Shown: positions 50,381 to 58,030 of the stretch, piece by piece
Layout of the letters: each line of letters begins with the position of its first letter
Numbering within the stretch: the stretch's first letter is position 1
Virus record (IMG/VR): IMGVR_UViG_3300042889_001503
Coordinates: 124,001 to 188,000 of that record
Strand: one strand, 5' to 3'
DNA: 64,000 nucleotides
Notes under the pieces: model-generated
Databases searched by the model: none
What the model was told of the DNA's origin: nothing
Seen by the model: only the letters and a program-made list of their open reading frames with translations
Translations under genes and position numbers: made by a program

Positions 50381-50411
50381 TTTGGATAATTAAAAATATG
50401 TCTTATCTTTG
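50381..50411 (+). promoter_or_regulatory. Bacteroidota-type sigma70 promoter
   Basis: TTTG-19 nt-TATCTTTG. Confidence 0.75.
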
Positions 50412-50462
50412 TCCCGTTGAATAAAGAAAATAACGTTTGTTAGATTATTTACAAAAAACAAA

Positions 50463-50470
50463 TATTTATA
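50463..50470 (+). promoter_or_regulatory. TATTTATA motif
   Basis: 14 nt upstream of the ATG at 50485. Confidence 0.6.
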
Positions 50471-50484
50471 ATAAAAACAATTAA

Positions 50485-51882
50485 ATGAAGATTATCCAAG
50501 TACTTTCAAATTTAATAACTGAAGACGCTCGTTTTCAGGTATTTTATAATAAATATATACTACCTAGTGGTGATAGAAAAAAAGGATTACTTCCTTTTGA
50601 AATTGTTAAGCAAATAGTTTTTGCTGACCCAACAACAAGAGTTCCGGTTAACTATGACAAAAATGGTGCGTCCGTTGAAGATATGTTAAGTAATCAAATT
50701 AAGGTTGGGAAATATAGTCAATGGATGTTAAATATGTTTATTAAACCACATTTAACTAATGACAATAATGATGTTATAGAAGTTAATACTGACGAATATA
50801 AATCAAAGGCAAATCAATATAGAAAACTTTTTTTAGAAGATTTACATTACTTTACTGAATTACTAACAAAATTTGAAAGATTCAAAGGTAGTTTAGTAGA
50901 TGCGTCTAAGAAAGATATTAATAATGTTAAATCTATTAACGAATTATCTCAATTACAAGTTGAGTATGGTGATACAACAGTTGATTTGGCTGTGTATCGT
51001 GGTAAAAAAGTTAAAAACGAAAAAGGTGCTGACGTTAAAACAAACTTTAATTTTCCCGGTGCGGAAATATTAAAGGTTGGTTCAGAATATACCTTGATTA
51101 GAATTTCTGATAAAGGTGACTTAGGTTCTAAGGCGGCTTCTTATTTTGGAGGTTACGAAGGAGGATTAGCAAGAGGTGAGTCTAATTGGTGTACGGCAGC
51201 AACAGGTTCTGACCACTCACATAGATATAGACAAAAAGGTCCATTATATATTATTATGGCTAATGACGATAAAGGTAAAGTAGGTGAGGTAACAGGATTA
51301 CCTACAGAAAGATATCAACTTCACTTTCCAGCACCGAGTCAATTTAAATCTCGTGACCAATATTCTGCTGAGGGTAATGTCCCAATTGTTGAATTTTTAA
51401 ATGGTAAATGGAGTGAATTTAAAGAAATATTGAAACCTGAATTTGCTAAAGGGTTTGTTACACCAAATAGTGAAAACGTTAACATTAGATATCCATCTGA
51501 TGAAACAGGTAGATTTGTTGCGTTATATGGGTTTGAAGAATTATTTGAGGCGTTACCGGACACGATTAAAAAATTAAATATTGTTAACACTTCAAATGAA
51601 AACATTAGTGTAGCACTTCCTAAGTCAATTGTTAGGTTTAAATCGTTAGTGGCGGTGATGTTTCAGAATATGATTAGTTCAATTCCTGATAACATCTGTG
51701 AGTTGAAGAACTTGACGTTATTGGCTTTCCCTGATAATAAAGAATTAAAATCAGTTCCGGATTGTATACTGTCATTAAAAAACTTTACATTTTTAAATGT
51801 AAACGGATGTCCTAATGTTCAAGTACCAAAAGAATTGGAAAAATATAATGAAGGTAATGGTTATTACCATATGGAAGAATAG
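50485..51882 (+). CDS. LRR-containing protein, paralogue 1
   Basis: LITED leader; WCTA motif; C-terminal LP..I..L..L LRRs. Confidence 0.75.
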   Translation: MKIIQVLSNLITEDARFQVFYNKYILPSGDRKKGLLPFEIVKQIVFADPTTRVPVNYDKNGASVEDMLSNQIKVGKYSQWMLNMFIKPHLTNDNNDVIEVNTDEYKSKANQYRKLFLEDLHYFTELLTKFERFKGSLVDASKKDINNVKSINELSQLQVEYGDTTVDLAVYRGKKVKNEKGADVKTNFNFPGAEILKVGSEYTLIRISDKGDLGSKAASYFGGYEGGLARGESNWCTAATGSDHSHRYRQKGPLYIIMANDDKGKVGEVTGLPTERYQLHFPAPSQFKSRDQYSAEGNVPIVEFLNGKWSEFKEILKPEFAKGFVTPNSENVNIRYPSDETGRFVALYGFEELFEALPDTIKKLNIVNTSNENISVALPKSIVRFKSLVAVMFQNMISSIPDNICELKNLTLLAFPDNKELKSVPDCILSLKNFTFLNVNGCPNVQVPKELEKYNEGNGYYHMEE

Positions 51883-51892
51883 ATAAAGAAAA

Positions 51893-51900
51893 TATTTATA
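51893..51900 (+). promoter_or_regulatory. TATTTATA motif
   Basis: 17 nt upstream of the ATG at 51918; leader region duplicated with the gene. Confidence 0.6.
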
Positions 51901-51917
51901 ACAAAAAAACAATTAAA

Positions 51918-53309
51918 ATGAAGATTACAAAAGTATTATCGAACTTAGTTACTGAAGACGCTCGTTTTCAAATTTTATACAAAAAATATGTGTTACCTAG
52001 TGGTGATAGAAAAAAAGGTTTACTACCATTTGAGGTTGTTAAACAAATTGTTTTCGCTGACCCAACAACGAGAGTTCCTGAGAACTACGATAAGGAAGGT
52101 GCGTCTATTGAGGATATGACAAGTGACAAAATTAAAGTTGGTAAATATACCCAATGGTTGTTGAATCTATTTGTTAAACCATACATAACTAGAGAAGGTT
52201 CTAATGAACCAATTGAGGTTGGGACTGATGAGTATAAATCAAAGGCGACTGAATACAGACGACTTTTCTTAGAAGATTTATCTCAATTCACTGAATTATT
52301 AGTGAAATATGATAGATTTAAAGGTAGTTTAGAGGATGCCGCTAAAAAAGACATTAACAATGTTAAATCACTTAATGATTTATCTCACTTGAAAGTTAAA
52401 GTGGGTGATGAAACGGTTGATTTAAATATGTATCGTGGTAAAAAAATTAAGAAAGAAGAAGGTGTTGCTGCTAACACAAACTTTAATATTCCCGGAGCTG
52501 AAATTTTAAAAGTTGGTTCTGAATACACACTAATTAAAATTGCTGACAAAGGTGCTTTAGGTTCTAAAGCGGCATCTTATTTCGGTGGTTATAGTGGAGG
52601 ACTTGATAGAGGTGAAACTAACTGGTGTACGGCAGCAGAAAATTCAAGTTATTCAAACACTTACAGACAACAAGGTCCATTATATATCTTTATTGCTAAT
52701 GATGATAAAGGTAAGGTTGGTCAAGTTACGGGGTTACCATCAGAAAGATATCAATTCCACTTCCCATCTAACCAATTTAAATTTGCTAACCAACACGGTG
52801 GTAACATTCCGGTTGTTGAGTATTTGAATGGTAAATGGTCTGAGTTTAAAGAAATATTCAAACCTGAGTTTGCGGCTGGATTTGTTAAACCAAATTCTGA
52901 TAATGTTGAAATTAAATACCCGGACTCTGCTACAGGTAAGTTCGTGGCTTTATACGGATTTGATGAATTATTTACATCATTACCTATAACAATTAAAAGA
53001 TTGAACATTATTAACACTTCAACAGAAAGTGTTACAATTGATGTTCCTGAGTCAATCAGTAGATTCCAATCATTAACAGCAATATTGTTTGAGAATATGA
53101 TTAGTAAACTTCCAAACTCAATCTGTGAATTAAAGAACTTGGTGTTTATCGCTGTTCCGGGTAACAAAGAATTGAAAACAATTCCGGAATGTATTATGAA
53201 TTTACCAAACCTTACATTTGTGAATGTAAGTAGATGTCCTAATGTTCAAGTGCCAAAAGCGTTAGAACAATACAATACGGGTGAAGGTTTCTACCATATG
53301 GAAGAATAA
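51918..53309 (+). CDS. LRR-containing protein, paralogue 2
   Basis: End-to-end similar to 50485-51882. Confidence 0.75.
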   Translation: MKITKVLSNLVTEDARFQILYKKYVLPSGDRKKGLLPFEVVKQIVFADPTTRVPENYDKEGASIEDMTSDKIKVGKYTQWLLNLFVKPYITREGSNEPIEVGTDEYKSKATEYRRLFLEDLSQFTELLVKYDRFKGSLEDAAKKDINNVKSLNDLSHLKVKVGDETVDLNMYRGKKIKKEEGVAANTNFNIPGAEILKVGSEYTLIKIADKGALGSKAASYFGGYSGGLDRGETNWCTAAENSSYSNTYRQQGPLYIFIANDDKGKVGQVTGLPSERYQFHFPSNQFKFANQHGGNIPVVEYLNGKWSEFKEIFKPEFAAGFVKPNSDNVEIKYPDSATGKFVALYGFDELFTSLPITIKRLNIINTSTESVTIDVPESISRFQSLTAILFENMISKLPNSICELKNLVFIAVPGNKELKTIPECIMNLPNLTFVNVSRCPNVQVPKALEQYNTGEGFYHMEE

Positions 53310-53327
53310 TTTAAAAAAAATACTACT

Positions 53328-53618
53328 ATGAAAAATGTTGACGTTGAAATCTACATTAATCAATTTATAACTTTCTTTAATAACAACCCCAATGACTTAC
53401 TTGAGTTAATTGGGGATGTTTTGAAGGACGACTTCTACGACAGAGTTAAACAACAATCTTTGGATAATGTTAATAACGGTGAGGATGTTTCCTTAACCCA
53501 AAAACAAATTATATCTATTGTTGTGGCTCTTAAACAATCTCAAAATGATGAGGTTGATATGGATAAGATTAAGTCCATAATTTATCACACACAATTCGGA
53601 CATTTTTCCCTTAATTAA
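53328..53618 (+). CDS. Hypothetical protein
   Basis: ORF track. Confidence 0.6.
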   Translation: MKNVDVEIYINQFITFFNNNPNDLLELIGDVLKDDFYDRVKQQSLDNVNNGEDVSLTQKQIISIVVALKQSQNDEVDMDKIKSIIYHTQFGHFSLN

Positions 53619-56389: not shown

Positions 56390-56396
56390 TATGGGA

Positions 56397-56404
56397 TATT
56401 TATT
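56397..56404 (+). promoter_or_regulatory. TATTTATT motif
   Basis: 3 nt upstream of the ATG at 56408. Confidence 0.55.
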
Positions 56405-57940: not shown

Positions 57941-58022
57941 GATAATATATGTATTAAAGTTTATATATCCATAAATATCAATAATAATCATAATAAGTAA
58001 ATAAATTTTGTATCTTCGTGGA

Positions 58023-58030
58023 TATTTATT
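58023..58030 (+). promoter_or_regulatory. TATTTATT motif
   Basis: 3 nt upstream of the ATG at 58034. Confidence 0.55.

What the first reader, a model, noticed from the sequence alone, without database searches (positions are those of the whole stretch)
50381..53309. Tandemly duplicated LRR proteins, each with its own late motif and leader
Seen: two colinear, diverged ~464 aa paralogues with duplicated upstream sequence (aatatttata..aaaaacaattaaa-ATG). Architecture is leader, helical domain, WCTA domain, then four or five LRRs. Differences cluster after WCTAA (TGSDHSHR vs ENSSYSNT), at 'APSQFKSRDQYSAEG' vs 'SNQFKFANQHGG', and on LRR beta-strand positions. Copy 1 also has a host-type promoter. 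Inference: diversified protein-binding effectors, for example anti-defence factors with distinct targets.
Basis: partly seen in the sequence, partly recalled or inferred. Interest (0 to 1): 0.6.

Follow-up and report, generated by a model that had tools for sequence, protein, structure and literature searches.

The report
Two stacked alleles of phage LRR protein
A lake-water jumbo phage carries, side by side, two old and divergent versions of one gene from a large uncharacterised phage-only family. Each protein has a conserved leader, an enzyme-like module of unknown fold and a fast-changing leucine-rich-repeat binding domain, and it probably travels in the virion to act on a host protein.

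Summary
Window 50485-51882 and 51918-53309 (+) encode colinear proteins of 465 and 463 aa. They are 70% identical, and each has an ATATTTAT motif about 20 nt upstream. The pair is not an assembly artefact: it recurs in six IMG/VR contigs, and one contig of an independent assembly spans both genes.

It is not a recent duplication. Nearly all of about 75 syntenic relatives have one copy. Copy 2 groups with single-copy genes at 90-93% identity, copy 1 groups with other alleles, and holding the copies together is rejected (AU p=2e-8). The locus swaps alleles between conserved flanks.

Both copies are under purifying selection (dN/dS 0.08-0.3). The LRR is the fastest-evolving part and the 13-residue leader the slowest.

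The N-terminal 340 aa match no Pfam family and no known fold, yet they define a family of 2256 viral clusters with invariant W-C-T and Q-x-H. One member is a PA5oct protein found in virions by mass spectrometry.

The leader ends in I-x-E, like a T4 capsid-targeting propeptide, and the phage encodes a T4-type (S77) prohead protease.

Best reading, at moderate confidence: a virion-delivered modular effector with two specificities. Anti-defence is possible but untested.

The parts
50381..50411 (+). Bacteroidota-type host promoter before copy 1: -33 TTTG (50381-50384), 19 nt spacer, -7 TATCTTTG (50404-50411).
   Evidence: Sequence. The same TTTG-N19-TAnnTTTG arrangement lies before many genes of the phage. 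TTATCTTTG is conserved at this place in close and mid-distance relatives. That this is the Bacteroidota consensus is from my own knowledge.
50462..50469 (+). Phage promoter-like motif ATATTTAT, starting 23 nt before the ATG of copy 1.
   Evidence: It is conserved before this gene in all relatives examined, down to 39% protein identity. The genome holds 95 copies. About 22 of them start 21-28 nt before an ORF start, against roughly 0.4 expected from the genome-wide density. One of those ORFs is the S77 prohead protease gene.
50485..51882 (+). Copy 1, 465 aa (P0001). This is the added allele. It has 87% orthologues only in the other tandem genomes.
50485..50523 (+). Leader of copy 1, MKIIQVLSNLITE (aa 1-13), ending in I-T-E. 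It is a candidate capsid-targeting propeptide and prohead-protease site.
   Evidence: It is the most conserved segment in the close clade (entropy 0.45). The pattern MK.T..L...I[LVT]E is kept in 70 diverged cluster representatives. pLDDT is 42 for residues 1-10. The T4 precedent is in PMC9026906.
50524..51489 (+). Conserved N-module of copy 1 (aa 14-335): helical part, alpha/beta core and long linker helix. W-C-T is encoded at 51187-51195 and Y-Q-x-H-F at 51313-51327.
   Evidence: Models. There is no Pfam, NCBIfam or PDB sequence match and no confident fold match. D48, W235, C236, T237 and Q278 are invariant, and H280 nearly so, in 84 diverse members.
51553..51879 (+). LRR domain of copy 1 (aa 357-465): four to five repeats plus a conserved aromatic C-terminal tail.
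   Evidence: It has the highest entropy (1.37) and the highest dN.
51883..51917 (+). Junction between the copies. It is 35 nt long and repeats the promoter-like motif (ATATTTAT at 51892-51899) and the A-rich leader. It has no host-type promoter.
51918..53309 (+). Copy 2, 463 aa (P0002). This is the resident allele: 90-93% identical to the single-copy gene of the nearest relatives and adjacent to the conserved downstream gene. Its leader is at 51918-51956, W-C-T at 52623-52631 and the LRR at 52980-53306.
   Evidence: Contigs in three freshwater RNA libraries lie on this copy only, at 95-99% likeness.

Best explanation
**What the two genes are.** They are two long-separated alleles of one gene that is normally single-copy and sits in a fixed syntenic slot (DnaJ, small ORF, Dam methylase, this gene, a 96-aa ORF, a 593-aa ORF, thioredoxin). 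The gene occurs across a large clade of freshwater jumbo phages whose promoters point to Bacteroidota hosts. In this phage lineage a second, foreign allele (copy 1) was placed in front of the resident one (copy 2) by recombination, and it brought its own short promoter-like element.

**How each protein is built.**
1. A 13-residue leader, MK(I/F)T..L..L(I/V).E.
2. A module of about 320 aa with no recognisable fold. It carries invariant D-P-T-T, E-D, W-C-T and Q-x-H residues, a pattern more typical of an active site than of a scaffold.
3. A short LRR that evolves fastest.

**Proposed mechanism (inferred).** The protein is made from the phage ATATTTAT promoter together with head genes; copy 1 is also made from a host-type promoter. 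The leader directs the protein into the prohead, and the phage's T4-type S77 protease trims it after the I-x-E site. The protein is then delivered into the cell with the DNA, as T4 internal proteins and Alt are. There the LRR selects a host protein and the N-module acts on it or blocks it. Two alleles give two specificities.

**Shown:** gene structure, family membership, synteny, non-sister copies, allele replacement, purifying selection, the conservation pattern, presence of the protease, and virion association of a distant homologue.

**Inferred:** packaging, cleavage, delivery, catalysis and the target.
For: **Copy number and synteny.** Relatives have a single copy in strict synteny.

**Origin of the pair.**
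- Copy 2 groups with single-copy genes (support 100/99). Copy 1 groups with other alleles (88/88).
- One clade of all tandem copies is rejected (AU p=2.4e-8). The independent pair in L052 is also non-sister (p=9e-12).

**Allele replacement.**
- In L034-36, L046, L048, L050 and L080 the flanking proteins are 83-97% identical to the window's, but this protein is only 41-50% identical.
- DNA alignments break at the gene borders.
- One lake sample holds both the tandem form and, at four times the depth, a contig that joins the same flanks across one unalignable gene.

**Selection.** dN/dS is 0.08-0.30 in all pairs. Entropy runs leader 0.45, core 0.76, LRR 1.37.

**Family.**
- The N-module profile finds 2256 representatives at E<=1e-3.
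- The core motif is kept in 114 domain instances.
- Atlas and BFVD matches are almost all viral.
- A pattern scan of 185,579 prokaryote genomes found no relative.

**Virion association.** PA5oct EST35_0205 is annotated 'structural protein, ESI-MS/MS' and is a member: 60 bits against the profile, Foldseek E 1e-7, with W-C-T aligned. The MS method is described in PMC7318152.

**Leader.**
- It is conserved in 70 representatives.
- The Peptidase_S77 gene scores 85 bits against a cut-off of 27 and carries the same upstream motif.
- In T4, ten N-terminal residues suffice for capsid targeting, and processing depends on positions 8 and 10 (PMC9026906).
- Two otherwise unrelated ORFs of the phage share the leader pattern, against 0.135 expected from shuffles.
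- hhalign aligns only residues 1-24 between the two families.
Against: - No data show that this protein is in a virion, is cleaved or is ejected.
- The PA5oct homologue is distant (about 20-27% identity), has a different C-terminus, and its place in the virion is unknown.
- The leader regex was derived from the family itself. The hhalign probability is only 37%. Many homologues of the 530-aa ORF are called from a downstream Met, without the leader.
- Conservation continues past E13 into helix 13-25, so the leader may simply be part of the fold.
- A host-type promoter before copy 1 is not needed by a purely packaged protein.
- The gene lies among DnaJ, Dam and thioredoxin genes, not in the structural block.
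- The broad family's conserved QFMD..D acidic residues are not kept in this LRR subfamily. No Cys-His fold was recognised.
- The ATATTTAT motif also precedes many small genes, so 'late' is not established.
Confidence: 0.4

Rival explanations
1. The protein is a cytoplasmic effector that is never packaged, as in the first reader's anti-defence idea. It would be made in the infected cell, where the LRR binds a host defence or housekeeping protein and the N-module inhibits or modifies it. Two alleles would counter two host variants.
For: - There is a host-type promoter before copy 1 and before the single-copy orthologues.
- The gene lies among non-structural genes.
- Alleles are replaced between conserved flanks, as expected of arms-race genes.
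- The LRR is of the intracellular SHOC2 / Leptospira / Xop type.
Against: - A family member is found in virions.
- The most conserved part is a leader with a protease-site-like ending, which a cytoplasmic effector would not need.
- The promoter motif is shared with the prohead protease gene.
- No known anti-defence family matches, and no defence assay exists.
Confidence: 0.25
2. The protein is an accessory host-recognition or adhesion protein on the outside of the virion. The conserved N-module would dock on or oligomerise at the particle, and the variable LRR would bind a cell-surface structure. This resembles the DUF7941 'fibre cloud' proteins of phage Goslar. Two alleles would widen host range.
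For: - A conserved N-terminus with a swappable C-terminus, cassette exchange and stacking of variants are the classic pattern of receptor-binding proteins.
- The PA5oct homologue is a virion protein in a block of structural genes.
- Goslar offers a precedent of an N-module followed by LRR or carbohydrate-binding domains (bioRxiv 10.64898/2026.04.21.720040).
Against: - An invariant Cys, His, Gln and acidic residues are unusual for a docking module.
- Alternative C-termini in the family include ankyrin, LRV and DUF4116 repeats, which are typical of intracellular protein binding.
- There is no fibre, beta-helix or carbohydrate-binding domain.
- The gene is far from the window's large structural ORFs at 1346-30581.
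- No Pfam hit to DUF7941 was found.
Confidence: 0.2
3. The pair arose by a recent in-place tandem duplication, followed by rapid divergence driven by positive selection. This is the literal reading of the finding's title.
For: The genes are adjacent and colinear, of the same length, and share an upstream element.
Against: - The copies are not sisters, and the AU test rejects a single clade (p=2.4e-8).
- Copy 2 is 93% identical to single-copy genes in other phages.
- dS between the copies is about 0.9 and dN/dS is 0.21.
- An old duplication with repeated reciprocal losses cannot be fully excluded.
Confidence: 0.05

Closest known systems
Pseudomonas jumbo phage PA5oct EST35_0205 (QCG76086.1, 'structural protein, ESI-MS/MS') and its unnamed family (PHROGs 17056 and 28193, unknown function)
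   Same: The N-module is homologous. The window family's profile scores 60 bits and aligns T-x-W-C-T-A, Y..GPLY and the Q-x-H region. Foldseek gives E 1e-7. [quoted passage not shown]
   Different: Identity is only about 20-27%. The PA5oct C-terminus is helical, not LRR. The host is a Pseudomonas. Its function and its place in the virion are unknown.
T4 internal proteins IPI-III and Alt (capsid-targeting sequence, gp21 cleavage, delivery with the DNA)
   Same: Both have a short N-terminal leader ending in a hydrophobic-x-Glu site. The phage encodes a gp21-type (S77) protease. The T4 genes are poorly conserved and tied to an arms race with the host (PMC9026906). Alt pairs packaging with an enzyme activity; that point is from my own knowledge.
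   Different: There is no sequence or fold relationship. These proteins are much larger than the T4 IPs. Packaging and cleavage are not shown here. This is an analogy of mechanism, not membership.
Bacterial injected LRR effectors (Xanthomonas XopL, XopAC/AvrAC, XopAE; the IpaH/SspH type)
   Same: The logic is the same: an LRR targeting domain joined to an effector domain. The LRR part gives weak matches (22-34 bits; Foldseek hit to the XopL LRR).
   Different: Scores are far below the family cut-offs of 450-600 bits. The domain order is reversed. The effector module is unrelated. There is no secretion system.
Goslar / Chimalliviridae DUF7941 virion proteins
   Same: This is a paralogous family in a jumbo phage with a conserved N-terminal module followed by variable C-terminal domains, including LRR. 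The proteins are virion-associated.
   Different: No sequence match was found. DUF7941 is reported only in chimalliviruses. Those proteins carry carbohydrate-binding and hydrolase domains and are proposed to form external fibres.

Membership tests
Leucine-rich repeat superfamily (C-terminal domain only) | Tandem LxxLxL-type repeats that form a beta-strand/helix solenoid | tested here: met
   The family profile matches many solved LRR proteins over positions 355-447 (E 2.7e-46). Foldseek hits are only to LRRs. The AF2 model shows four to five strand-helix units. Single-sequence Pfam LRR_14 and LRR_13 scores (16-24 bits) are below the cut-offs.
PA5oct gp205-like jumbo-phage family (unnamed) | Shared N-module with [ST]xWCT, Y..GPLY and YQxHF motifs | tested here: met
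   The profile search returned 2256 representatives. The motif is kept in 114 domain instances. PA5oct EST35_0205 scores 60 bits with W-C-T aligned. BFVD Foldseek gives E 1e-7.
PA5oct gp205-like jumbo-phage family (unnamed) | Presence in the virion | not testable with these tools
   This is known only for the PA5oct member, from the record's ESI-MS/MS note. There is no proteome for this uncultured phage.
T4-type packaged internal proteins (CTS-bearing) | N-terminal leader of about 10 residues ending in (L/I)-x-E | tested here: met
   The leaders are MKIIQVLSNLITE and MKITKVLSNLVTE. I11 and E13 are at least 90% conserved. The T4 determinants are at positions 8 and 10 (PMC9026906).
T4-type packaged internal proteins (CTS-bearing) | Phage encodes a gp21-type prohead protease | tested here: met
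   G000 28476-29201 matches Peptidase_S77 at 85.3 bits (cut-off 27) and PHROG 207 at E 6e-44.
T4-type packaged internal proteins (CTS-bearing) | Cleavage of the leader, packaging in the head and ejection | not testable with these tools
   This needs virion mass spectrometry and infection assays.
Xanthomonas LRR type III effectors (XopL, XopAC, XopAE; NCBIfam) | Whole-protein score above the curated cut-off | tested here: not met
   Scores are 22-34 bits against cut-offs of 450-600, and only the LRR part aligns.
Papain-like / NlpC-P60 / transglutaminase-like Cys-His enzymes | Recognisable fold with Cys at a helix N-terminus and His on a following strand | tested here: inconclusive
   The secondary-structure order (C236 before helix 243-251, H280 at the end of strand 276-280) is compatible. 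Foldseek (best E 0.8) and VIA-align (best Z 4.8, GNAT-like) found no such fold.
PcfJ-like (PF14284) | Pfam match | tested here: not met
   No hit at E<=1 in 79 members or at 1e-4 in 84 diverse members. Only weak structural and feature leads exist (Foldseek E 2.7e-3; Atlas score 0.88).
DUF7941 (Chimalliviridae virion module) | Pfam or HMM match to the N-terminal module | tested here: inconclusive
   No Pfam family of any kind matched the N-module. I could not confirm that the Pfam copy holds the DUF7941 model.

The most novel reading that the evidence does not exclude
The N-module would be a new enzyme fold with a W-C-T / Q-x-H active site. It would define a very large, phage-only class of virion-delivered effectors, addressed to the capsid by a T4-like leader. 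Exchangeable repeat domains (LRR, WG, ankyrin, LRV, DUF4116) would aim it at different host proteins. On this reading it is a phage counterpart of bacterial injected LRR effectors, and natural populations mix and stack its specificity alleles.
Probability: 0.2. Interest if true: 0.8.

Novelty: new variant of a known kind. Interest (0 to 1): 0.55.

Why it matters
**A large family without a name.** Jumbo phages carry many virion proteins of unknown role. This family has no Pfam name and no solved or recognisable fold. It has more than two thousand 50%-identity clusters, and one cultured member has been detected in virions.

**A tractable entry point.** The locus has a fixed genomic slot and a conserved module with candidate catalytic residues. 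It also has a candidate packaging signal and protease site, and a specificity domain whose alleles are replaced and stacked in natural lake populations. If the mechanism holds, it would extend the T4 'internal protein / Alt' principle to jumbo phages of other phyla. It would also give a natural system for studying how phages retarget delivered effectors.

**If it does not hold.** The result is still a clean example of allele stacking at a recombination hot spot that could be mistaken for a recent duplication.

Tried and rejected
**Searches that found nothing useful**
- blastn and tblastn of the locus against 50,697 phage records gave no match. Only a distant family representative reached cultured phages.
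- Pfam, PHROGs and NCBIfam gave nothing for the N-module beyond unknown-function PHROGs and LRR hits.
- PDB sequence profiles found only LRRs.
- Foldseek against PDB with the N-module model gave a best E of 0.8. VIA-align against 48,161 chains gave a best Z of 4.8 (HAT1/GNAT-like), below the level that means anything, so GNAT membership is rejected.
- The Atlas feature search returned only unnamed viral clusters.
- The genome contigs pattern scan found no prokaryotic relatives. The patterns were specific to the subfamily, so this is weak evidence of absence.

**Ideas tested and dropped**
- E. coli-type sigma-70 and terminator scans found no more sites than shuffled sequence.
- RNAalifold found no consensus structure in the leader region. 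A hairpin I named by hand is 86% paired but covaries only weakly.
- Hot-spot clustering of the paralogue differences is not significant by the maximum-window test.
- The 530-aa ORF that shares the leader is not a distant paralogue. Only the first 24 residues align.
- The PA5oct paper has no supplement held as text, so N-terminal peptides could not be checked.

**Not attempted**
- Site-wise codon models. No PAML or HyPhy was available, and only about 12 distinct nucleotide sequences are in the close clade.
- Complex prediction, because no binding claim is made.
Full report
**Setting**

The window is bases 124001-188000 of a 272,437-bp IMG/VR virus record, 32% G+C, estimated 91% complete. Lake-water metagenomes hold the locus. 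Many genes are preceded by TTTG-N19-TAnnTTTG. From my own knowledge this is the Bacteroidota housekeeping promoter consensus, so the host is probably a member of that phylum.

**The observation**

ORFs at 50485-51882 and 51918-53309 (+) encode proteins of 465 and 463 aa. They align end to end at 70% identity. Both are preceded by ATATTTAT and an A-rich stretch ending CAATTAA(A)-ATG. Only these two copies exist in the genome.

The AlphaFold2 model, built on 79 homologues, has pLDDT 89 and pTM 0.80. It shows:
- a disordered first ten residues;
- a mostly helical region to about residue 155;
- an alpha/beta core at 156-300 with N-W-C-T at 234-237;
- a long helix at 310-328;
- four to five LRR units.

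The LRR is confirmed by a profile search of PDB sequences (E 2.7e-46, positions 355-447) and by Foldseek.

The arrangement is not an artefact:
- The identical pair occurs in four other IMG/VR contigs and a diverged pair in two more.
- Fourteen runs hold 99-100% of the sampled words.
- A 2902-nt contig from an independent assembly covers 50456-53357 without a mismatch.

**Not a recent duplication**

Of 79 related viral loci, nearly all carry one copy in the same syntenic slot, between the Dam methylase gene and a 96-aa ORF. In a maximum-likelihood tree, copy 2 sits with the single-copy genes of L006/L017/L008/L013 (support 100/99; 90-93% identity). Copy 1, with its 87% orthologues in L004/L005, groups with the single-copy genes of L009/L014/L015/L016 (88/88). 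Forcing all tandem copies into one clade costs 67 log-likelihood units (AU p=2.4e-8). A second, independent tandem pair (L052/L054) is also non-sister (p=9e-12). These groups were named after the tree was seen.

The simplest history is that a foreign allele was placed in front of the resident one. An old duplication with several reciprocal losses is the alternative.

**A locus that swaps alleles**

In L034-36, L046, L048, L050 and L080 the flanking proteins are 83-97% identical to the window's (Dam, the 96-aa ORF, thioredoxin). This protein is only 41-50% identical, as far as in the most distant genomes. DNA alignments fade inside or at the borders of the gene. One lake sample holds the tandem form at depth 12.5. 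It also holds a 1442-nt contig at depth 52.9 that starts in the shared promoter region, ends in the next gene, and carries one unalignable allele between them.

**Selection**

Nei-Gojobori dN/dS is 0.21 between the copies, with dS about 0.9. It is 0.08-0.21 between orthologues. It is highest in the LRR but never near 1. Both copies are therefore maintained.

Within 36 close homologues, mean column entropy is 0.45 for the leader, 0.84 for the helical part, 0.76 for the core and 1.37 for the LRR. In the LRR, variable positions alternate with conserved hydrophobic ones.

The overall unevenness is mild (p=0.02).

**What the N-terminal 340 residues are**

There is no Pfam, NCBIfam or PDB sequence match. 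Foldseek against PDB finds nothing. An exhaustive structural alignment peaks at Z 4.8, which is not meaningful.

Even so, a profile of this part finds 2256 cluster representatives at E<=0.001 among 1.84 billion proteins. In 114 domain instances the motif [ST]xWCT ... Y..GPLY ... YQxHF ... QF[MK][DN] ... D is kept. In 84 diverse full-length members D48, W235, C236, T237 and Q278 are invariant, and H280, E118 and D119 nearly so. This is the pattern of an active site. The chemistry is unknown, and this LRR subfamily lacks the broad family's acidic residues after QF.

LRR is the commonest C-terminus, found in about 33-40 of the 84 members. Structural and Pfam evidence shows the same module joined to WG repeats, LRV, DUF4116 and ankyrin repeats. 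Some proteins contain two to four modules. Atlas and BFVD matches are almost all viral, and a pattern scan of prokaryote genomes found none.

**A functional lead**

Cultured carriers are PA5oct-like Pseudomonas jumbo phages, Caulobacter phage CcrBL9 and Salicola phage SCTP-2. PA5oct EST35_0205 (482 aa) matches the profile at 60 bits with T-R-W-C-T-A aligned, and the model at Foldseek E 1e-7. It is annotated 'structural protein, ESI-MS/MS' and lies within a run of virion proteins. The PA5oct paper reports 93 proteins found in particles (PMC7318152).

**The leader**

The first 13 residues are the best-conserved part. They keep the pattern MK.T..L...I[LVT]E in 70 diverged representatives, yet the model does not pack them. 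PA5oct gp205 begins MKLFEVFTLYED.

The phage encodes a T4 gp21-type prohead protease (Peptidase_S77, 85 bits), and that gene carries the same ATATTTAT motif. In T4, the first ten residues of IPIII suffice for capsid targeting. Processing depends on positions 8 and 10, and cleavage follows a Glu (PMC9026906).

Two otherwise unrelated ORFs of this phage begin with the same pattern, against 0.135 expected from shuffles. For the 530-aa one, profile-profile comparison aligns only residues 1-24 (probability 37%). This is suggestive, not proof. The pattern was derived from the family, and many homologues of that ORF are called without the leader.

**Expression signals**

ATATTTAT lies before this gene in every relative, down to 39% identity. 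In this genome it sits at two preferred distances from start codons: 12 nt for 17 genes and 21-28 nt for about 22 genes. It is therefore a general phage promoter-like element. 'Late' is plausible, because the protease gene has it, but it is not shown.

Copy 1 and the single-copy orthologues also have the host-type promoter about 80 nt upstream. Copy 2 does not. Contigs in three freshwater RNA libraries lie on copy-2-type sequence only, at 95-99% likeness. They come from relatives and cannot prove transcription.

**Verdict**

The 'duplication' is better described as two stacked alleles of a swappable gene. The interpretation as diversified binding effectors is reasonable but unproven. The most likely mechanism is a virion-delivered modular effector (confidence about 0.4). 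The rivals are a non-packaged cytoplasmic effector (0.25) and an external host-recognition accessory like Goslar's DUF7941 proteins (0.2).

Noticed in passing
whole record G000; in the window for example 56396-56403 and 58022-58029: ATATTTAT sits at two sharply preferred distances from start codons. It is exactly 12 nt for 17 genes, several of them right after hairpin terminators, which would give near-leaderless mRNAs if the motif acts as a -10 element. It is 21-28 nt for about 22 genes.
   Followed up: partly
G000:C1:209021-210613 (L095) and G000:C1:59176-59565 (L096), outside the window: A highly conserved 530-aa ORF (981 homologues, 72-98% identical) and a 129-aa ORF with a weak WYL-like match begin with the same MK....[IV]K.[IL]I[TL]E leader as the LRR proteins. 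They are otherwise unrelated. They may be fellow cargo that uses the same signal.
   Followed up: partly
G000:C1:28476-29201 (L087), outside the window: This is a T4 gp21-type prohead protease (Peptidase_S77, PHROG 207) with the ATATTTAT motif 24 nt upstream. The head morphogenesis of this otherwise poorly annotated phage is therefore T4-like.
   Followed up: yes
window 50412-50445 and the same place in L004-L074: An AT-rich hairpin (7 bp stem, about 15-nt loop) lies between the host-type promoter and the ATATTTAT motif. It is paired in 86% of cells, against 23-48% in shifted controls, but covariation is weak and the window's own version pairs poorly.
   Followed up: partly
window 50456-53357, run X1: The same lake sample holds a second contig, 1442 nt at about four times the depth. 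It shares the promoter region and the start of the next gene but carries a single unalignable allele between them. Alleles of this gene therefore coexist in one population.
   Followed up: partly
L004 and L005, 7390-7430: In the diverged tandem pair, the motif before copy 2 has decayed to ATAGTTAT. Copy 2 there may depend on read-through from copy 1.
   Followed up: no
window 53328-53618: The 96-aa ORF directly after the variable gene is unusually conserved: 91-97% identical in genomes whose LRR allele is only 41-50% identical. It has no family match. It always follows the gene, so a functional link is possible.
   Followed up: no
window 1346-30581: A block of very large ORFs (1884, 1021, 1190, 807, 751 and 728 aa) has no PHROG match at all. 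It is presumably the tail or baseplate module of a lineage far from cultured phages.
   Followed up: partly
proteins P0209, P0214, P0217, P0231 (search hits, not in the window): Some metagenomic proteins of 1400-1850 aa contain three or four copies of the N-module at a period of about 450-500 aa. These could be fused tandem arrays or read-through gene calls.
   Followed up: partly
window 51859-51879 and 53286-53306 (C-termini): The family keeps an aromatic C-terminal tail (G-[FY]-Y-x-x-x) after the last LRR, even in members at 40% identity. Its role is unknown.
   Followed up: no
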